Assembly: GCA_907165135.1 (NCBI GenBank)
Contig: OU015568.1
Coordinates: 4,526,001 to 4,590,000, forward strand
From: Oikopleura dioica
Taxonomy: Eukaryota > Animalia > Chordata
DNA length: 64,000 bases
Direction of reading: 5' to 3'
This document shows, piece by piece, positions 41,936-53,019 of the stretch. The number at the start of each line of letters is the position of its first letter. Position 1 is the first letter of the stretch. The translations under genes and the position numbers were made by a program. The notes beneath the pieces were generated by a model. That model was not told the origin of the DNA. It ran no database searches and was given only the letters and a program-made list of their open reading frames with translations.

Positions 41936-42288
41936 GTTCTTATAAAAAGTTCAGTTTTACTTCCTAAAGTTCTTTTCTACATAATAAAATAAGCATAAAA
42001 GAAGAGAAAGTGCGAGAAACTTTTGTTAAGTGATATAATTTGAATTATACGACTCGCGAGAAGTATCACAGCTTCGCGTACGTAATCATTATTCTTAGTG
42101 TCAAATAAAAATTAACGGCGACTTTTGCATGATTACTTATTTTCTACGTCGACTAAGCTTTTATCTTCTGCTGCCATAAAAATAAAATATCGTTAAATTA
42201 ATGAGAAAAACCATTTTTATACGACAGTGTCTTCTGAGTCGGATAAGCTTAGTGTGACAAAAAACTTTCATAGAGATTTTCCGTGAAA

Positions 42289-44755
42289 ATGAAGCTTTAC
42301 CTTCTTTTTACCGGAATTCTTGCAAAGAGAGAATCTTCTAGAGCTGAATTCACCACTGACTTCCCATTCGACTTGATCACGGATTACACGACCGAGCTAC
42401 CGGGTGATTTAGTGACTTATTTCGCAGCTGATTCTAGCACTGATTCCCAAACCGATGAAGACTTAGAGCAAGAAGGCTTTACTACTGACTATCCCGCAAA
42501 CATCACCTCTTCTTTTGAAGCGCCAATATCCTCAACAACTATTCCTACTTCCACAAGCTCAACAGCAACATCAACAACAAGAACCACAGCTACATCGACA
42601 TCCGAATCTTCGACCAGAAGTACAATTTCTACAACGACCTCTTCTGAAGGTTCTTCGGGTGATTCTTCGGATGACTTTACCACTGAGTATCCATACTTTG
42701 ACACAGAAGACTTTACAACTGACTTACTCGTGGATTTCACCTCCCCTTCAGAAGAGCTTTCGTCTTCAACACTAAGTACCTTGATGTCAACTTCAACATC
42801 CACAACAAGATCGACAGCAAGCTCGACAACTGAGCCCCAAACTAAAACCACGACAAAAGAATCTTCAACGGAGTCAACGACAGAGTATCAAGGAACAGTC
42901 TCCACCGCGGATTACACTTCTACTTCCGAAAACTTTCATACGTCCACAAGCTCAACAGCAACGTCAACAACAAGAACAACAATGACATCAACAACTGAAA
43001 ACTCTTCGGGCGATTTTACTACTGACTATCCATACTTTGGCTCAGGAGATTATACAACTGATTCCCTTGAGGATTTCACCTCTACTTCAGAAGAGCCATC
43101 ATCTTCTACATTTAGTACGTTGACGGAAACTTCAACATCATCGACAGCATCTTCAACCCTTGCTTCAACACGATCACCACCCACTTGTCTTCAAAACACG
43201 GCCTTTGGTGACATTTTCGTCTGGGAAATCGCGCCTGGCATGGACAAGCCATCTCCTTATTCAAATTTCGAGCATGAAATCGCAAACTTTGCCGGAGACA
43301 CTCAAGATTGTCAGCGAGAGTGTGCAAGTTTCGCCGGCTGTTACAAGGAGCGGACTCTCGAAAAAACGTCGTAAATTTCTGATCTTAAAAATCATAAGCC
43401 GGAAGTACCATGAATGAGTCCAATAAAAGCTCCATCATGATGTTGACAACAATATTTGCGAGCTTCGTGGTGATGAAATTACTTTCTCAGAAGACGGAAA
43501 TGACTATGCGGTTTCTGGTAAATCCTGCGAATCCAGCTATGAGTGGATAGATTACGCGGTGAATCTCGAGTTTTATTGTCTTTTTTCGACTTCGCAAACT
43601 CCTGAGGATTTTCTCGCTATGCTGAATAGCTATAATCCACCTGGCTGGGTTACTTACACATCTCTTGGTTTTGCCTATTCGTACGAGTTTGCATTCGAAT
43701 TGGCTACAAACGTACCTTGGATTCAGCCAGCTGGACCAAATCAGATTTGGATCGCATTCGTTGGCGAACTTCATATACGATTCGAAAACTTTAATTTCTC
43801 CCGAAAGCGCCGATTTGCCATCCCTGAGGTTGAAGTTGACAGCGTCATTCAAGATGTCGCTGCCAACGCAACCACTGAGTTCCAATCGTCCATCGATGCT
43901 GGGAACGCTACTGTAGCTATTACAACAAATACAACCGTGGAAGTTGAAGAAGTCGCGCCAGTTATTGATCCTTTAGATCCGACATCTACACTTGCTCCAA
44001 CAACAACAAGCACTACAACCACCTCGACAACTACAACTACAACTACCACGACAACAGCAACTACCACTACTTCTACGACCACAGCAACATCAACAACCAC
44101 CACGACAATTACAACTACGACGACAAGAACGACAACTTCTACGTCATCAACTACTACAAGTTCATCAACAACGACAACAGCGAGCACAACTACCATTAGT
44201 TCAAACTCTACTGGGACGATTCCTCAACTAGGAAGTCTTTATGACTTGGGATTTTAATCAAAGCATCTGATTTATTTCAATAATAATTATCATCTTTTAT
44301 AACTTGTACAGAAAAATCCCGACAAAAGACACCCTTGAATTGGTTTTATCTGATGCCGTGGCCGATCACCCAAACAACAAACTGAAAAATTTCTATAAAA
44401 TCAAGGCTCGTTTCGGCTGGTTCAACGATTACGTCGAAACTCCCTGCGTGAATCCCGCCGGTGCTGGTCCAGGAAAAGGTCACTTACAGCCAAACATTAC
44501 TCTCTTGAGCAAAACTCAAAGACCTTTATAAAAGGAATCGCACCAGACTTTGTTGACCCGACGATTTCAATAAACGATCCTTGTCTTGCCGCCAAAACTT
44601 TCTACAATGCTCTCCTTGGCTTCTACGATGATTTCGTCTGCCTTGACAGAATCAGAAACAGAGGAATCACGAAAAACGTTGACAACAAACTCGACCAAGC
44701 AAAAGATCTTTTCAACCGAATCTTGAGAAAGACAACCTGTCCTCTTCTTGTTTAG
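42289..44755 (+). CDS. Secreted mucin-like protein: Ser/Thr/acidic repeats, PAN/apple-like module, SEA-like domain with RKRR, Thr stalk and Cys-containing C-terminal domain
   Basis: Signal peptide MKLYLLFTGILA, FTTDY repeats, CQRECASFAGCYK|LHHDVDNNICEL joined by a GA-AG intron (43348-43429), FSRKRRF, a Thr tract and terminal exons ending ...TTCPLLV. Confidence 0.8.
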
Positions 44756-44819
44756 ATAACAATAAGAGATTTTCTTTTACTATTTTGCTGTAGCATGTTT
44801 CTTTCATCTTTACACTATC

Positions 44820-45142
44820 CAGGGTTCGGTAATTTGAGCTCAAGCTAAAACTCATTTTGGCTAGACGCTCAAATTTCCTCAAATTGAGAACTCAAAGTGA
44901 CTTGAGAAATCATTTTGAGAAGATTTGAGAGTTTTGAGAGTTTTGAGTTTTTGGGAGATTTGAGAGTTTTGAGTTTTCAAAACTCAAATTAAGCGAGCAC
45001 TTCCTTGATTGGCTCATGGATCGCCAGAATTGATTTCTAACGCGAGCTCTCATCTCTGAGTTCTCAAAACTCAAATTAAAAAACGTGAGTCTCAAGCTTT
45101 GTTTCCTTGAGTTTTAGCGTGAGCTCAAATTACCGAACCCTG
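44820..45142. mobile_element. hAT-type MITE (CAGGG termini, 8-bp TSD acactatc)
   Basis: TIR cagggttcggtaatttgagctca/tgagctcaaattaccgaaccctg; TSD at 44812-44819 and 45143-45150. It is absent from the duplicated copy near 52195. Confidence 0.93.
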
Positions 45143-47329
45143 ACACTATCTATAATAAATTATAATTTATAATAAGTGTATTCGGCATTTTTCGAAGTTT
45201 GTTTTAAGATTTCAATATTTTCGACGAATTTCAGCCAGACTCGCTACCGACCCGATCGGAGTCATTTTACTTTCAACAGAGGACCAGTAGTGCAAATTCT
45301 GCGCTCCATTTGTGTAATATCGATCATTTGTGCAGCCAAATCTTCCAGTATTGAAGCGTTCTCCAAAACTTAAAATTTGCTTATCTCAACAGCTCTGCAA
45401 AAGTTACCTGAATCTGGACTTGACGGGATCTTTCGGACAATAATCCTTATTGTTAGTTCCTTGCCAATATTTGAAGCCACTCTTTGCTCTGAAAAATTCA
45501 AACTCAAGTTTAATGATTCTGATTCAAAGCTGACCTTAAACTGTAAGAAGACTGAAGGGCTCTAATCGATTTATTTCTTTGGCGCTCCTCACTTTCGAAA
45601 ATTTCAAAAACATAAGCTCAAGTTCACTTTGAAGATTTTTTTCTTTGAGAAATTTTCCTTGTTGATTTCAAATACAAGTGTGGGAGGTGAAGAGCTGATG
45701 CTGATTGAAAAGCTAAATAATGATGAAAAATCGATTTAGTTTTTGGGCTCAACATCCTGTGTAGGAGACCTGACTCAGGTTCCGAAAAGTCGCGTAGCTG
45801 CTTTTTCAAAAACGAAGCCGCTTTGCAACATCACTATTGATTAGTGGACATTTCAAGAAAAGGCGACATTTCAAGAAATCGGACATTTCAAGAAAAAAGA
45901 AGATTTCAAGAAAAAAAAATTTCTTGAAATATCCGGTTTCTTGAAATGGCTCTTTTGATTGAGATGTCTATTTTCTTCAAATGTCTCTCGTTCTTGAATT
46001 GTCTGTTTTTTTATGAAATGTCCGCTTTCTTGAAATGTCTCTTTTTCTTCAAAAGTTCCTTTTTCTTGAGATTTCCTTCTTTTAAATTTATTGGCGAACA
46101 ATTATTGATTGCAAATATATGTCCCCCGACATATCGGAGTCGAACACGAAATTCCGTCAGTCAGGAATGATAATCGCGGTATATCGATCCTTCCTCTAAG
46201 GGACCAGAAGATGTACCAAAGCTCGCTGAAAAATTCGGCGCTGATCTTCCAAATATCATGGCTCACATCAACAATGTCGCTGTTTTCGTCAATATCGTCG
46301 GCCAGATCATGGTTCTCTTTCTTGGCCTGCTGATGGAAAGCCCTCATTTACGAAGAAATCTTCTCCTCTGCGATCAAAATGATCTCAAATCTTCTCTCGC
46401 CGCTATTGCTGCTGAAAAATGCGGAGGAGTTTGGGGATACACGCCGAAAATAATACGAATTTCGGAGTCTCAAGAATTGAAAGAAATCGCGCTTCCTTCC
46501 GTCTCTCTTTTCATCGCGGGTGTGGCAGAAATGACAGGGGAGCATATCATATGCTGCGTATGCGCAGAATCAGGGCGAATTTCGCCGCGGCCCAAAATTG
46601 GCGAAAATGTCATGTTTTGGAGATTTATGAGTCAACCGAAATTGGATCACAACTTTTCCGGTTTATTTTCTTTTTTGATGTCTTCTTTCAAGAAATTCTA
46701 GAACTGGCCTCTTAGAAACCGATGAATTCGCCGAAAAAACAGGGCGCCCTGTCTCCGAATGTCTCCAAAAATAACAAAAATGTTCTAGAAACTACGAATA
46801 TCCGAATTTTGTCCGGACGATAGGAGACGTGTAAATGAAAATGTTACCTCCCCGATCAATGAGTTTTCTACCACAAATTGCGCGGAGCGCTTAATTCTAG
46901 CGGATTTTCAAAAGAAAATCATTTTCACAGTATCTAACATTATTTTTAGCTTATTTTTATTTTTACGTATTTTCGAAAAACTCTCTAGAACACGTATATT
47001 TTCCGTTTATTTTATGTTTATTCAACCGTCATTTATGTCCGTGAACCTGCTTGTGAATGGAAAAATTGACAAAAAACCACTTGCTGCAAAATATATTCAT
47101 TAAAAACAAAGTTTGTTTTTTTTCAGAAAATCAAAAAGATGACTTATCACTGATAAGTTATCAGACAAATTTCGAAAGAATTGGAATATAGGGGACCCCG
47201 TATTAGTACAAACTGTATATCCGAATATTGCTATTCTTCATAAATGAAATTCTATTATTTATTCTTTCGTTTTATTCATAAAGATCTCTTGTAATACATC
47301 AAAGTTTAAATGCAATAGTCAGAAAAAGT

Positions 47330-48960
47330 ACGAAAAAGAATAGGGTTCCGATACGAAGTACTGTTTCCAATTATTCCAGTATTCACTACTTGATCGTTAG
47401 CAATGTCAATTCTTTGAATAGGATTCCCTCTTCCATATCCGGCGACAGTAATAATTAAATTGTCGATAATCATTGCAGATCCATATGAGTCAGCCTTGAT
47501 TTATAATTTAATAAGACTGTAACTCATGAGCTTACGATTTGAAGTTCACCGATTCTTGTCCAGTTGTTGTTTTGAAGAAGCCAAATTCCTGTTTGACTTG
47601 TCCAACTCTCATTAACAATACTATTTCCACCAGCGAGCAAAAGATTACCACTTGGAAGCCCAATTAAAATGTGACTGTAGATCCCGCTTGAAATTATTTA
47701 AAAGCTGATGATAACTTATCACATTACTTCAACGGAAAATCCGATAAAGTTGACCATCCCGAGGAAGTTAAGGTTTCCACTTTTATCCGACTCTCGCCTG
47801 ATTGATTGCCAACAGTCGTTGGCTGCTGATGATAGAATCCAAGTTTGCCCATCGCATGATCAAACTTAGTTCCATAAGTTCCGACAGATGATGTACCATT
47901 AAAGATTTCACAATAGTTGTACGGCTTATACCAATGAAAGCAAACAAGAACACGGTCTCCGTTATCGATAGTCAGAGCAGCACTATGAAAGTCAACCCCG
48001 ACCTTCAAGCGTGCGGATTGTTCTTGCCACTCGCAACCTTCTAATTTTGATATCTAATGAAGTTTTTTCAAGGAAATCAAATCTTTATTACTCTTTGATA
48101 ATCCCATCCCCCACCAAATACAAATAACTCGTCTTTGAAGAGAGCATAAGGACACTGGCTTAGATATGAATCTCGCGTAGCATTTATTGATGGAAACGTC
48201 TTTGTTAATCCATCAATTGAAATTGTAAATGATTCTTTCAGACTGTCGGTCATAACAAGGATGTGCTTAAATTTTTTATTTAATATACAAATGAAAGAAA
48301 AATATATATTATTTTCATAAGTCTGCGATGATTCGTGTTTAGAATTTACCTGCATGATAGTTGATGATGTTGTTGGCACATAAGTCGACGTTTTTGTTGT
48401 TGTAGGTGAAGATGTTGTTGTCGTAATTATATTCTTAAAAAAATAAGCACATTATAGAAATTATCTCTTTACCTCTACGCAAGGGCAGCTATCCAAATCT
48501 TGTAACAGTCGATCATTACATTGTTCAAAGCAATCGCGGTCTGGAGGGCAGGCACGAATGCAGATGGCCTGATAAATAGACATTTGTTCTTTTTATTATA
48601 TAACTACCTGATTTTCTAATGACTCTTCTCTACATTCAATAAAATGATGGTTTTCTGTCGCTGCCGAATCGCATGCGTCCGAACAAACTGGACTTGCGCA
48701 GTTTAGACATCCGTTCGGACAATTTGTTCCACAAGGACAATATGAAGAGCATTCTTGATAAGGTGTTGAAAGAATAATTCATATATTTTTTTAATTTTTC
48801 ACTGCGATACCTCCGAACTTATTTACACATTCATTTTCACAAAGAGCATTTTCACAGCTCTCGCGGCACTGCAGAAAATCAATTCTGCAAAGACTGTAAC
48901 ATTCATTGAACAGATCTTCGTCACTTAAACAGAGAATGTGAATGTTTTGATTTTCCATAA
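47330..48960 (-). CDS. Cys-rich repeat plus Kelch-like propeller protein (paralogue 2; ends approximate), inside the foldback element
   Basis: CYSLCRIDFLQCRESCENALCENEC, YCPCGTNCPNGCLNCASPVC, DSCPC, a Thr linker, then FKDELFVFGG, VLVCF and KVETLTSSGWSTLSDFP; same architecture as the gene at 33740-35391. Confidence 0.68.
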
Positions 48961-48981
48961 TTGGTTCTTTCGTGGGGTGGC

Positions 48982-49161
48982 GGGCGCCCAGGTTCATAAT
49001 CGGTCGGTTCAAAATTTTGTGAACAAGGTTCATATTACGTCGAAAAAGTGACTCAAATAGACTGAAGGCGCAATTGCAGAGAAAGCTTATAACGTCAAAA
49101 ATGAGTTGAACCGGGTTCACAAAATTGTGAACAAGGTTCACAATTGTGAATCTGGGCGCCC
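48982..49161. mobile_element. Small MITE with gggcgcccag(g/a)ttca(t/c)aat TIRs
   Basis: Inverted termini and internal repeats of tgtgaacaaggttca; no clear TSD. Confidence 0.65.
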
Positions 49162-50332
49162 TACACCCCTTTCATGAAGATTTGCAATGAAAGATTTCTA
49201 TTTATATGAAATTGAAATTCTGCATTAGTAGACTCACACACAAGTTTCCGTCGAAATACTTGCTAAATTTTCTTCAAAAAGTCTTGTCTCTTTATCTAGC
49301 AATTTTTGAAGGCTTTTTGCTCGAGGTCGATCATTGAGTTGTTTTGCTATACATAAGCCATAAAAATGGAGGAATTGAAGAAATATCATTTTTTTCAATT
49401 GAAAAGAAGTCTTATTGCTTCATCAAGTCAAATTCAATTGAATAATTATTAAACAACTCGACTTTAGTCTCTCGAGCTTGTTCAAGTGATATTTGCTTCG
49501 ACCGTAAATGCATGAGCTTACAGATAAAACATAATTGCTGGAAAATATCATCATAAGAAGGAATCCCTCCGTCTATCCTGGGTAGGCTTCATCTCCCCAA
49601 GAGCTTTATTCTCCCAGAGCTTCATTTCTCTAAAAGCTTCGTTTCCCCAGCCTGGGCAGATGAAGCTCTTGGGGAGATGAAGCTCTTGGGCCAATGAAGC
49701 TCCTATTCGATTTTTTTAGTATTTCAGAAAAAATTTCAAAAATATTTCTAGAAATATCAATCCTTTTCGTATCAAACACGAATTCGTTGCTATAATAGAA
49801 TAAAATCAAGAAATATTTTTTCTCGAACGTCAAAAATTAGCTTCGCATATGACCGTTTACTATTTATATTTCTTTATTTATCTTTATTTAAAGGTGTCAA
49901 CATCGATTTTCGCATTATTTCTGCATCAGTTTAGGTATACCAAATCGTGCAATCAACCTTTAAAACAGTTTTTATTGTATCAATAAAGATTAAAAAAATT
50001 TTTCTTCAATGAAAAATTTTTGCCCAGAGTTTGGGGGCAGATATTCGTATTTTTTCTTTGTGCAATAGGATAATTTTTGAAAAAAAACGTACATTTCAAG
50101 AAAACGGAACATTTCAAGAAAAAAGAACATTTCAAGAAAAAAGAACATTTCAAGAAAGTAGACATTTCAAGGAGAGCAGACATTTCAATGATATCGGACA
50201 TTCCACGAATAAAAGAAATTTCAAGGCGATGGACATTTCAAGAAAAATATACATTTCAATCATTTCTTGAAATGTCTGCTTTCTTGAAATGTCTGCTTTC
50301 TTGAAATGTCTCTTCTTCTTGAAATGTCCTTG

Positions 50333-52069
50333 AACAGCAGGATCAACAACAAGAACAACAATGACATCAACTACTGAAAGTTCTCCGGGCGATTTTACCA
50401 CTGACTATTCCTATTTTGCCTCGGGAGACTATACAACTGACTCACTTGAGGATTTCACCTCTACTTCAGAAGAGACATCATCTTCTACATTTAGTACCTT
50501 GACGGAAACTTCAAAATCATCGACAGCATTTTCAACCGTTGCTTCAACACGACCACCACCCACTTGTCTTCAAAACACGGCGTTCGGTGACATTTTCGTC
50601 TGGGAAATTGCACCTGGAATGGACAAGCCATCTCCTTATTCAAATTTCGAGTATGAAATCGCAAACTTTGCCGGAGACACTCAAGATTGTCAGCGAGAGT
50701 GTGCAAGTTTCGCCGGCTGTTACAAGGAAAGGACTCTCGAAAATACATCGTTACTTTCTGATCTTAAAAATTATAAGCCGGAAGCACCATGAATGAGTCC
50801 AATAAAAGCTCCATCACGATTTTGACAACAATATTTGCGAGCTTCGTGGTGACGAAATTACTTTCTCAGGAGACGGAAATGACTATGCGGTTTCTGGGAA
50901 ATCTTGCGAATCCGGCTATGAGTGGATAGACTACGCTGTGAATCTCGAGTTTTATTGCCTTTTCTCGACCTCCCAAACTCCCGAGGATTTTCTCGCTATG
51001 CTGAATAGCTATAATCCACCTGGATGGGTTACTTACACATCTATTGGTTTTGCCTATTCTTACGAGTTCGAATTCGAATTGGCTACAAACGTACCTTGGC
51101 TTCAGCCAGCTGGGCCAAATCGGATTTGGATCGCATTCGTTGGCGAACTTCATATACGATTCGAAAATTTTAATTTCTCCAGAAAGCGCCGATTTGCCAT
51201 CCCTGAGGTTGAAGTTGACAGCGTCATTCAAGATGTCGCTGCCAACGCAACCACTGAGTTCCAATCGTCCATCGATGCCGGAAACGCTACTGTAGCTGTT
51301 ACAACAAACACAACTGTTGAAGTTGAAGAAGTCGAGCCAGTGATTGATCCATTGGATCCAACATCAACACTTGCTTCAACAACAACGAGCACTACCACCA
51401 CCTCGACAACTACAACTACAACTACCACGACCACAGCAACTACCACTACTTCTACGACCACAACAACATCAACAACCACCTCGACAATTACAACTACGAC
51501 GACAAGAACGACAACTTCTACGTCTTCAACTACTACAAGTTCATCAACAACGACAACAGCGAGCACAACTACCGTAAGTTCAAACTCTACTGGGACGATT
51601 CCTCAACTAGGAAGTCTTTATGACTGGGGATTTTAATCAGAGCATCTGATTTATTTCAATAATAATTATCATCTTTGATAACTTGTACAGTAAAATCTCG
51701 ACACAAGACGCTCTTGAATTGGTTTTATCTGATGCCGTGGCCGATCACCCAAACAACAAACTGAAAAATTTCTATAAAATCAAGGCTCGTTTTGGCTGGT
51801 TCAACGATTACGTAGAAACTCCCTGCGTCAATCCCGCCGGTGCTGGTCCAGGAAAAGGTCACTTACAGACAAACATTACTTTTTCTGAGCAAAAATCAAA
51901 GACCATTATAAAAGGAATCGCGCCAGACTTTGTTGAACCAACGATTTCAATAAACGATCCTTGCCTTGCCGCTGAAACTTTCTACAATGCTCTCCTTGGC
52001 TTCTACGATGATTTCGTCTGCCTTGACAGAATCAGAAACAGAGGAATCACGAAAAACGTTGACAATTAA
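50333..52069 (+). pseudogene. 5'-truncated duplicate of the PAN/SEA mucin gene with a premature stop
   Basis: Begins mid-repeat (homologous to 42954) with no signal peptide. AAC AAA has become AAT TAA at 52064-52069, removing the last ~20 codons; otherwise it is colinear with copy 1. Confidence 0.75.
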
Positions 52070-52880
52070 CTCGACCAAGCTAAAGATCTCTTCAACCGTA
52101 TCTTGAGGAAGACAACCTGTCCTTTACTTGTTTAGATAATGATAAGCGATTTTCTGTTATTATTTTTGCCTTAGCATGTTCCTGATTATCTATATTCTAT
52201 CTTTAATAAACAATTATTTATAGTAAGTATATTTGGCATTTTTCAATATTTTCGTCGAATTTCAGCCAGACTCGCTCCCGACCCGATCGGAGTCATTTTA
52301 CTTTCAACAGAGGACCAGTAATGCAAATTCTGCGCTCCGTTTGTGTAATATCGATCATTTGTGCAACCAAATCTTCCAGAATTAAAGCGCTCTCCGAAAC
52401 TAAAATTTTTCTTCATCACAAAAGCTCTGGAAAAGTTACCTGAATCTGGACTTGACAGGATCTTTCGGACAATAATCCTTATTGTTAGTTCCTTGCCAAT
52501 ATTTGAAGCCACTCTTTGCTCTGAAAAAAATTCAAACTCAAGTGCAAAAAGCTTCAAAGCTGACCTTAAACTGTAAGAAGACTGAAGGGCTCTTCTCGAT
52601 TTATTTCTTTGGCGCTCCTCACTTTCGAAAGTTTCAAGAAGATAAGCTCAAGTTCACTTTGAAGATTTTTTTCTTTGAAAATTTTCCTTGTTGATTTCAG
52701 GTGCAAATGTGGAAGATGAAGTGCTGATGCTGATTGAAAAGCTAAAAAATCATGAAAAATCGATTTCGTTTTTGAGCTCGGCATCCTGTGTAGGAGACTT
52801 GACTCAGGTTCCGAAAAGCTTAAATGAAAAGTCGCGTAGCGGCTTTTTCAAAAAGGAAGCCGCTTTGCAACATCACTATT
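50333..52880. repeat. Second copy of a ~2.55-kb direct segmental duplication (first copy 42954-45838)
   Basis: Colinear similarity runs from aacagca..tcaacaacaagaac to gcaacatcactatt and includes non-coding sequence. The length difference is explained by the hAT MITE in copy 1. Confidence 0.93.
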
Positions 52881-53019
52881 TACGTCAAATTTGAACTCCT
52901 GGAAAAGCCTCATCGCAGCTTCATTCAAAAAATCTGCGACGCGGCTTTTATTTGAGGTCGTTTGATACTGACTCAGGTTTTCTACACAGGTTGGCGAGCC
53001 GAGAATCTAGGCCCAAGAT

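What the first reader, a model, noticed from the sequence alone, without database searches (positions are those of the whole stretch)
42954..52880. Foldback-like element with gene cargo sits exactly at the junction of a 2.55-kb direct duplication
Seen in sequence: the order is [copy 1, 42954-45838] + 7 nt + [element, 45846-50329] + 3 nt + [copy 2, 50333-52880]. The element's ends are mirror-image arrays of a gacatttcaagaaa subrepeat with exact outer termini; similarity of the inner ends of the arms is weaker. It encloses a Cys-rich/Kelch gene and smaller MITEs, and there is no short TSD. Established: foldback-type elements with subrepeat TIRs (FB, Galileo, some MULEs) promote rearrangements at their ends. 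Inference: insertion or aberrant transposition produced a kilobase-scale flanking duplication and imported a gene, making this a second cargo-carrying TIR element in the same window.
Basis: partly seen in the sequence, partly recalled or inferred. Interest (0 to 1): 0.8.

Follow-up and report, generated by a model that had tools for sequence, protein, structure and literature searches.

The report
Foldback transposon at tandem-duplication junction
In what is almost certainly the Okinawan Oikopleura dioica genome, a 4.5-kb hairpin-ended jumping element carrying two genes sits exactly between two copies of a 2.55-kb gene segment, which is what a botched insertion would leave; this kind of event is already known from maize and flies.

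Summary
Copy 1 (42954-45838) and copy 2 (50333-52880) are 93% identical over the 5' 1.87 kb and 87% over the 3' 0.7 kb. It belongs to a real low-copy foldback family. Other copies have paired GATTAGTGGACATTTCAAG termini, the same layout of 4 outer and 5-10 inner inverted 18-bp units at each end, differing interiors and 9-bp target duplications. The window's copy has no such duplication: its right end lacks the last 7 bp and joins copy 2 through a 3-nt filler. Copy 2 ends in the middle of an intact palindromic MITE, which is an unfilled target site, and copy 1 has only the left half of that MITE. The duplication starts inside an exon that is unbroken in copy 1. So this is a tandem duplication with the element at the junction. 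It is most likely an aberrant, one-ended insertion whose other end was joined by host repair, leaving a "giant target duplication". The interior holds one full-length member of a gene family with at least 150 copies, for which "Kelch" is only a weak match. It also holds a coding piece 90% identical to a gene 1.4 Mb away. A haplotype mis-join in the assembly is not excluded (about 0.1). The scan has already noted foldback and MULE elements elsewhere in this genome. This is a new member of a known kind.

The parts
42283..43374 (+). First long ORF of a Thr/Ser-rich mucin-like gene (starts MKMKLYLLF...). The proximal duplication boundary x (42954) lies inside it and the ORF is unbroken.
42954..45838 (+). 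Copy 1 of the duplicated segment. It has a 1-bp frameshift at about 44505 in the third ORF relative to copy 2 and to paralogs.
44820..45142 (.). MITE found only in copy 1 (TIR CAGGGTTCGG...), with 8-bp TSD ACACTATC at 44812-44819 and 45143-45150. It inserted after the duplication.
   Evidence: (I11)
45743..45838 (.). Left half only of a palindromic MITE, cut off at the element's left terminus. This is the distal boundary y, with target ATCACTATT.
45839..50329 (+). Foldback element, 4491 bp, divergent member of the GATTAGTGGACATTTCAAG family.
45839..46089 (+). Left end: canonical terminus GATTAGTGG, 4 outer units, then 8-10 inverted inner units. It folds into a hairpin on its own.
46180..47106 (+). 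Interior coding segment 'S' (46180-46740 and 47023-47106, open frame of about 173 aa). It is 90-91% identical to C1:3195221-3195722 and 70% to C4:798166, and is interrupted by a MITE at 46730-47005.
47309..48952 (-). Interior gene 'K': six stop-free segments (Cys-rich N-terminal part, then propeller-like repeats), colinear with paralogs. It belongs to a family with at least 150 matches in the genome.
48975..49172 (.). Nested multi-copy MITE-like repeat.
49579..49890 (.). Nested multi-copy palindromic MITE-like repeat.
   Evidence: (I17)
50072..50329 (+). Right end: 9 inner units, then 4 outer inverted units. The terminal ACTAATC (7 bp) is missing. It folds into a hairpin on its own.
50330..50332 (.). 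TTG filler at the non-canonical junction. With the following A it forms an in-frame TGA that closes copy 2's reading frame upstream.
50333..52880 (+). Copy 2: 5'-truncated, lacking the first 671 nt of the ORF (about 224 codons, including the start). All three ORFs are open.
52775..53003 (.). Intact palindromic MITE spanning the end of copy 2 (52880|52881). This is the unfilled target site, with a single ATCACTATT and no footprint.

Best explanation
A non-autonomous foldback-type DNA transposon arrived at this locus in an aberrant transposition event that also duplicated 2.55 kb of target DNA in tandem. The family has a 9-bp TSD and is probably Mutator/MULE-like. This copy carries about 4 kb of passenger DNA that includes one complete gene and one gene piece. 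The left end was joined by transposase at ATCACTATT in the loop of a resident MITE, and this junction is canonical. The right end was not integrated in concert. It lost 7 bp and was joined by host end joining 2.55 kb upstream, inside an exon of a mucin-like gene; O. dioica is reported to rely on MMEJ, which I take from memory and from the discussion in PMC11067885. Fill-in or replication of the stretch between the two attachment points gave U-[x..y]-element-[x..y]-D, which amounts to a kilobase-scale target-site duplication. Shown: the anatomy, the family membership, the intact outer sites and the non-canonical right junction. Inferred: the order of events, the enzymes involved and the single-step nature of the event.
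For: Both boundaries of the duplication coincide to the base with the element's ends. The left terminus GATTAGTGGACATTTCAAG is identical to that of other copies, which have 9-bp TSDs: L045 CTTTTGATA, L046 GACTAAAAA, L047 GCTTTGATT/GCTTTAATT. The same 4-outer/5-10-inner unit layout is found at C1:15.835 Mb, C4:0.302 Mb, C4:14.029 Mb and C5:16.035 Mb. The right end lacks ACTAATC and carries a TTG filler, and there is no second ATCACTATT next to it. Copy 2 runs without any extra bases into the right half of an intact MITE whose loop has the same length as in other family copies. This means the site shows no element and no excision footprint. The exon at x is uninterrupted in copy 1. The interior has no counterpart downstream of copy 2. 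A 6-nt match, GTCCAC, links the canonical right terminus to the exon just upstream of x; this is a lead only. In maize, tandem direct duplications made by Ac show the same layout, with the element at the junction and no element or footprint at the outer breakpoint (PMC3744419).
Against: There is only one such event: the other family copies have no flanking duplication. No transposase with these termini was found. The observed junction is not the simple product of the GTCCAC microhomology; it would need an extra 5-bp loss and 2 substitutions. The 5'-truncated copy 2 shows purifying selection as strong as copy 1 (11 synonymous to 4 nonsynonymous changes on its lineage, and no indel in 1.55 kb). 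That is unexpected for a promoterless fragment and would fit alleles as well as paralogs. No reads or other strains could be examined.
Confidence: 0.6

Rival explanations
1. Two-step origin. The element first inserted normally at ATCACTATT with a 9-bp TSD and was polymorphic. Later a break at its right terminus, from abortive excision or hairpin fragility, was joined to position x on an element-free homologue. Alternatively it was joined to the sister chromatid, and the second element copy was then lost by recombination with an empty allele. This includes the sister-chromatid and hybrid-element types of alternative transposition.
For: The left junction is canonical and the right junction looks like end joining. 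Alternative transposition is documented to give an element at the junction of a tandem duplication. Heterozygosity in this animal is high, about 3.6%, so empty alleles are plausible.
Against: It needs two breaks and an inter-homologue join, or an extra loss step. A donor-site repair after excision should leave two TSD copies or a footprint at 52880/52881, and none is present.
Confidence: 0.2
2. Assembly artefact. Copy 1 plus the element, and copy 2, are the two haplotypes of one locus (one insertion allele and one empty allele) placed in tandem by Canu/HaploMerger2.
For: The assembly was haplotype-merged from 99.3 to 64.3 Mb in an animal with about 3.6% heterozygosity. Both copies show equal, allele-like purifying selection. 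The copy lacking a start is as well kept as the complete one. A MITE present in one copy only and a 1-bp frameshift are typical allelic differences.
Against: There is no N in the window. The false join would have to fall within 7 bp of the element's right terminus and in mid-exon. Divergence is 7% overall, 13% in non-coding DNA and dS 0.12-0.22, several times the genome-wide heterozygosity. The flanks U and D are single-copy with sharp boundaries, not a gradual bubble. No other copy lies on the small scaffolds.
Confidence: 0.1
3. The tandem duplication arose first by an unrelated mechanism, and the element later inserted by chance at its junction and lost its right terminus and TSD.
For: A small deletion of 16 bp or more at the right end could hide a TSD.
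Against: It requires an insertion within a few bp of one particular junction in a 64-Mb genome by a family with only about ten copies. The left flank's 9 bp are wholly MITE sequence.
Confidence: 0.04
4. Unequal homologous recombination between two element copies flanking the segment.
For: Repeats of this kind can mediate such exchange.
Against: That route leaves elements at the outer ends of the duplication. Here neither outer boundary has one: the exon at x is intact and the MITE at y is intact. The maize paper uses the same argument.
Confidence: 0.02

Closest known systems
Tandem direct duplications made by alternative transposition of maize Ac/Ds (reversed-ends and sister-chromatid transposition; PMC3744419), and P-element hybrid element insertion in Drosophila
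   Same: One element lies exactly at the junction of two direct copies. There is no element and no excision footprint at the outer breakpoints. The duplicated segment starts at an arbitrary nearby site.
   Different: In maize both junctions are made by transposase and carry intact termini and an 8-bp TSD, and two nearby elements supply the ends. Here only one junction is canonical. The other is truncated by 7 bp with a filler, there is a single element, and no reciprocal deletion product is available.
Drosophila Foldback (FB/FB-NOF; RepeatMasker class DNA/MULE-NOF, from memory) and Galileo
   Same: Long inverted ends built from short tandem subrepeats, variable and mostly non-coding interiors, a 9-bp TSD as in FB, and an association with rearrangements.
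   Different: Each end here is itself a hairpin, with an outer array followed by an inverted inner array. There is no sequence similarity to FB or Galileo that I could test, and no linked transposase. Galileo makes 7-bp TSDs.
Non-concerted (one-ended) retroviral integration, where the second end is joined by host repair with large target duplications or deletions (RSV work of Oh, Hughes and colleagues; from memory, not checked here)
   Same: One canonical enzyme-made junction, one truncated junction made by host repair, and a target duplication far longer than the normal one.
   Different: A different class of element. Here it is known only from a fossil structure and not from experiment.
Pack-MULE-type gene capture (plants), and the MULE and foldback elements carrying host-gene pieces that this scan noted elsewhere in the same genome
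   Same: A non-autonomous element with passenger host DNA. Segment S is 90-91% identical to a gene 1.4 Mb away.
   Different: The interior holds an apparently complete multi-exon gene (K) with no close parental copy; the best paralogue is about 55% identical at the protein level. Pack-MULEs usually carry only decayed fragments.

Membership tests
Foldback-type DNA transposon (structural class) | Long terminal inverted repeats made of short tandem subrepeats | tested here: met
   17-18-bp GGACATTTCAAGAAA units, 12-14 per end, in mirror orientation
Foldback-type DNA transposon (structural class) | Several dispersed copies with paired ends, conserved termini and target-site duplications | tested here: met
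   At least 4 other paired copies and 3 truncated copies. Termini are GATTAGTGG...CCACTAATC, and 9-bp TSDs are seen at L045, L046 and L047
Foldback-type DNA transposon (structural class) | This copy flanked by the family's TSD | tested here: not met
   ATCACTATT is present only on the left, and the right terminus is truncated. This copy is an aberrant insertion.
Mutator/MULE superfamily (MULE-NOF-like) | 9-bp (8-11 bp) TSD | tested here: met
   9 bp in three copies and 8-9 bp in the sister family at L049
Mutator/MULE superfamily (MULE-NOF-like) | An autonomous copy encoding a MULE transposase between the same termini | tested here: inconclusive
   No long ORF in the interiors of E46, E47 or E49. 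Weak PF10551 hits (25-28 bits) elsewhere in the genome are not tied to these termini. Further DNA could not be fetched.
Alternative-transposition tandem direct duplication (Ac RET/SCT, P HEI) | Element at the junction; outer breakpoints without element or footprint | tested here: met
Alternative-transposition tandem direct duplication (Ac RET/SCT, P HEI) | Both element-flank junctions made by transposase (intact termini, TSD shared with the reciprocal product) | tested here: not met
   The right end lacks 7 bp and has a 3-nt filler. The reciprocal product cannot be tested.
Pack-MULE-like gene capture | Interior DNA with a recognisable parental gene elsewhere in the genome | tested here: met
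   Segment S is 90-91% identical to C1:3195221-3195722, with a third-codon-position excess of substitutions. Gene K has no close parent; the best paralogue is 53-56% identical at the protein level.
Kelch-repeat protein (interior gene K) | Pfam Kelch repeats above the gathering score | tested here: not met
   The only hits are Kelch_2 and Kelch_6 at E = 0.13-0.14 (12.8 bits against a cut-off of 21-25) on one exon. The other exons, the PDB and the Atlas give nothing.

The most novel reading that the evidence does not exclude
Hairpin-ended foldback/MULE elements, joined by this animal's error-prone microhomology repair, may be a recurrent source of the segmental duplications and synteny breaks behind the extreme genome scrambling of O. 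dioica. This locus would then be a dissected fossil of that process. It would also have made new expressed genes: a 5'-truncated mucin-like copy kept under selection, fed by a pyrimidine-rich tract and CAG acceptor at the element's end, plus an imported member of a gene family with at least 150 copies that may itself spread with such elements. A second lone element end lies 760 bp upstream of another family member at C5:15.32 Mb.
Probability: 0.12. Interest if true: 0.7.

Novelty: new member of a known kind. Interest (0 to 1): 0.45.

Why it matters
Transposon-made tandem duplications are well documented experimentally in maize and flies, but clean natural fossils are rare. Here both pre-event sites can still be read off the outer boundaries. 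In O. dioica the cause of the exceptional rate of rearrangement is an open question; PMC11067885 only speculates about MMEJ and cut-and-paste transposons. This locus gives a concrete structure that can be checked by PCR: one transposase-made junction and one repair-made junction. It also suggests a simple genome-wide test, namely whether foldback/MULE termini are enriched at duplication junctions and synteny breakpoints. Finally, it shows a whole gene and a partial gene placed in a new context, a possible route to new genes in a very compact genome.

Tried and rejected
1. Two independent hairpin MITEs flanking resident DNA. Rejected: the conserved terminus occurs only at the outermost ends, and other copies show the same paired layout.
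2. A flanking duplication as a habit of the family. No duplication was found around the other copies in the sequence fetched; the flanks of L049 are satellite.
3. A search for an autonomous partner. The interiors of E46, E47 and E49 have no long ORFs, and E49 is filled with satellite.
4. Other strains or haplotypes through the protein searches. One search was swamped by Thr-rich words. The second gave only a distant hit from a marine metagenome with a ZP-N domain. Records of this genome are withheld from that look-up.
5. Function of the genes. Pfam, the PDB and the Atlas gave nothing above threshold, and one Atlas call failed because the machine was busy.
6. Joined, spliced models of the genes were not built.
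7. A literature search for 'Oikopleura dioica' together with 'foldback' found no paper.
Full report
ORGANISM AND ASSEMBLY. The window is C1:4526001-4590000 of a 64,281,565-bp genome in 19 sequences, the longest 17.09 Mb. These figures match the OKI2018_I69 assembly of Oikopleura dioica from Okinawa: 64.3 Mb, 19 scaffolds, longest 17.1 Mb. That assembly was made with Canu and then haplotype-merged with HaploMerger2 from an animal with about 3.6% heterozygosity (PMC8008620). Earlier notes of this scan on the same genome (tiny and non-GT introns) agree with this identification. The window contains no N.

THE DUPLICATION. Self-BLAST and a global alignment confirm the direct duplication. Positions 42954-44819 match 50333-52201 at 93.2% with no indel in the first 1,551 bp. 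Positions 45146-45838 match 52197-52880 at 87.3%. Copy 1 is longer mainly because of a 323-bp MITE (44820-45142) with an 8-bp TSD ACACTATC. Copy 2 has the unfilled site, so that MITE inserted after the duplication. The segment carries three plus-strand ORFs of a Thr/Ser-rich, mucin-like gene region. None has a Pfam or PDB match. The only outside relative found is a marine-metagenome protein with a ZP-N domain.

THE ELEMENT. The unit GACATTTCAAGAAA occurs 16 times in the window at one mismatch or fewer, against 0.26 expected, and all occurrences lie in two arrays. Each end is itself a hairpin. On the left, 4 forward units (45846-45915) are followed by 8-10 inverted units (45920-46089). The right end mirrors this at 50083-50259 and 50263-50328. 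Each end folds alone far better than shuffled sequence, at -49 and -61 kcal/mol with z = -6.5 and -11.5.

The same layout recurs elsewhere in the genome with paired ends in fixed orientation:
- C1:15835544-15838453 (2.9 kb).
- C4:302400-305394 (3.0 kb).
- C4:14029359-14029674 (0.3 kb, no interior).
- C5:16035077 onward (right end truncated).
- A 165-bp derivative at C5:5529603.
- A lone 86-bp end at C5:15321999.
- A sister family with GGACATTACAAATAAAC units, 8.3 kb long with a satellite interior, at C2:12893209-12901555.

All share the terminus GATTAGTGGACATTTCAAG.../...CTTGAAATGTCCACTAATC. Intact copies have 9-bp target duplications: CTTTTGATA, GACTAAAAA and GCTTTGATT/GCTTTAATT, with 8-9 bp in the sister family. 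Interiors differ between copies and lack long ORFs. This is therefore a real, low-copy, non-autonomous foldback family.

CORRECTED ANATOMY OF THE JUNCTIONS. The element is 45839-50329 and abuts copy 1 with no spacer. The 9 bp to its left are ATCACTATT. The right end stops at ...GAAATGTCC, so the terminal ACTAATC is missing. It is followed by TTG and then copy 2, and there is no second ATCACTATT.

The end of copy 2 (52880|52881) lies in the loop of a complete palindromic MITE (about 52775-53003) that belongs to a family with dozens of copies. In an alignment with six other members, the copy-2 MITE is full length and has the same loop length. This site therefore has no element and no excision footprint. 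Copy 1 has only the left half of that MITE, up to the element.

At the other boundary, x (42954) lies inside the ORF 42283-43374, which is uninterrupted in copy 1. The structure is thus U-[x..y]-element-[x..y]-D with both outer sites in their pre-event state. The 4.49 kb between y and x is new DNA at this locus. It has no counterpart downstream.

MECHANISM. A tandem duplication whose two boundaries coincide to the base with the two ends of a transposon cannot reasonably be coincidence. Unequal recombination between two elements is excluded, because it leaves elements at the outer ends; the maize Ac study uses the same argument (PMC3744419). Sister-chromatid or hybrid-element transposition from a resident element at y predicts two TSD copies or a footprint at the copy 2|D junction, and neither is seen.

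The layout is exactly what a widely staggered integration gives: left end attached at y, right end attached at x, and the interval filled in. This amounts to a 2.55-kb target-site duplication. One junction is canonical and the other is truncated with a filler. I therefore favour a non-concerted event in which transposase joined the left end and host end joining attached the right end.

The canonical right terminus (...GTCCACTAATC) and the exon just upstream of x (...ACGTCCACAAGC...) share GTCCAC. This fits microhomology-mediated joining, the pathway O. dioica is said to depend on. However, the present sequence would need a further 5-bp loss and two substitutions, so this remains a lead only. 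A two-step variant also remains possible: normal insertion, then a break at the right end joined to an element-free homologue.

AGE AND SELECTION. Between the two copies dS is 0.12-0.22 and dN/dS is 0.14-0.32. Non-coding divergence is about 13%. Polarised with a paralogue on C5, the two lineages carry 21 and 22 changes, with 12 synonymous to 6 nonsynonymous on copy 1 and 11 to 4 on copy 2. Both copies have therefore been under purifying selection. Yet copy 2 lacks the first 671 nt of the ORF, including the start, and its frame is closed upstream by a TGA formed at the filler.

Copy 1 carries a 1-bp frameshift in the third ORF. Copy 2 and two paralogues keep the long frame, so the functional copy of that part is copy 2. 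Either copy 2 is expressed, or gene conversion is at work, or the two copies are alleles. For expression, the element's end supplies a pyrimidine-rich tract and AACAG|CAG just before an ATG at 50361; this is speculation.

THE ASSEMBLY-ARTEFACT RIVAL. The selection pattern would also fit two haplotypes placed in tandem. Several points argue against that:
- There is no gap in the window.
- The divergence is several times the genome-wide heterozygosity.
- The boundaries are sharp.
- A false join would have to fall within 7 bp of the element's terminus.
- No further copy lies on the small scaffolds.
I put this rival at about 0.1.

CARGO. Gene K (minus strand, 47309-48952) consists of six stop-free segments separated by 150 nt or less. 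They are colinear with paralogues. K belongs to a family with at least 150 matches in this genome, and the best paralogue is 53-56% identical. 'Kelch' rests on one sub-threshold hit (E = 0.13).

Segment S (46180-46740 and 47023-47106, plus strand) is coding, shown by a third-position excess of 73 against 42 and 46 substitutions. It has only two relatives, at 90-91% (C1:3.195 Mb) and 70% (C4:0.798 Mb). It therefore looks like a captured or duplicated piece of a host gene. Three multi-copy MITE-like repeats are nested in the interior. 'Imported a gene' is thus supported by the logic of the empty sites, although no donor copy of K exists.

COMPARISON AND NOVELTY. The structure works like the tandem direct duplications made by alternative transposition of Ac in maize and by P-element hybrid insertion. 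It fails one defining feature of those events, two transposase-made junctions. It resembles even more closely the one-ended integrations with large target duplications described for retroviruses; that comparison is from memory. The element is a foldback-type transposon with FB/MULE-like 9-bp TSDs, but superfamily membership is unproven because no transposase was linked to it.

This scan has already noted many foldback and Mutator-type elements on other DNA of this genome. These include elements carrying host-gene pieces and one note that MULE termini are themselves subrepeat hairpins (unchecked). My look-ups showed none at a duplication junction. The finding is a new member of a known kind. 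Its main value is as a concrete, testable example for the open question of how O. dioica rearranges its genome so fast (PMC11067885).

Noticed in passing
L051:3000-6769 (G000:C5:15321999-15325768): A lone, truncated 86-bp left end of the same foldback family lies 760 bp upstream of another member of the Cys-rich/propeller-like gene family. The gene points away from the end, the same relative arrangement as in the window's element. I estimate roughly a 2% chance of this by coincidence, given at least 150 family members.
   Followed up: partly
window 44812-45150: A 323-bp MITE (TIR CAGGGTTCGGTAATTTGAGCTCA) with an 8-bp TSD ACACTATC is present in copy 1 only. The unfilled site is visible in copy 2 at about 52196.
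   Followed up: yes
window 44505 vs 51885: A 1-bp indel shifts the frame of the third ORF in copy 1, the copy with the gene's start. Copy 2 and the paralogues at C1:996720 and C4:2802938 keep the long frame.
   Followed up: partly
L049:709-9056 (G000:C2:12893209-12901555): A sister foldback family with the same GATTAGTGG terminus but GGACATTACAAATAAAC units. It is 8.3 kb long, its interior is filled with a tandem satellite, and it is itself inserted in a different satellite array of about 170-bp period.
   Followed up: partly
window 42537-42800 vs 42931-43139: The mucin-like gene has an older internal repeat with a period of about 394 bp (80-90% identity). The proximal duplication boundary lies 12-23 bp into the second repeat unit.
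   Followed up: no
L048:4078-5300 (G000:C5:16035077-16036300): Another family copy has a truncated right end: the inner array stops and the outer units are missing. No TSD partner lies within the 10 kb fetched, so this may be a second irregular junction.
   Followed up: partly
G000:C1:5821086-5821304 and C1:5820005-5820023: A weak MULE-domain hit (28.3 bits) in a 596-aa open frame lies 1.1 kb from a sequence that differs from the foldback terminus at three positions (GATTAATGAACTTTTCAAG). The orientation does not fit a simple element, and the DNA could not be fetched.
   Followed up: no
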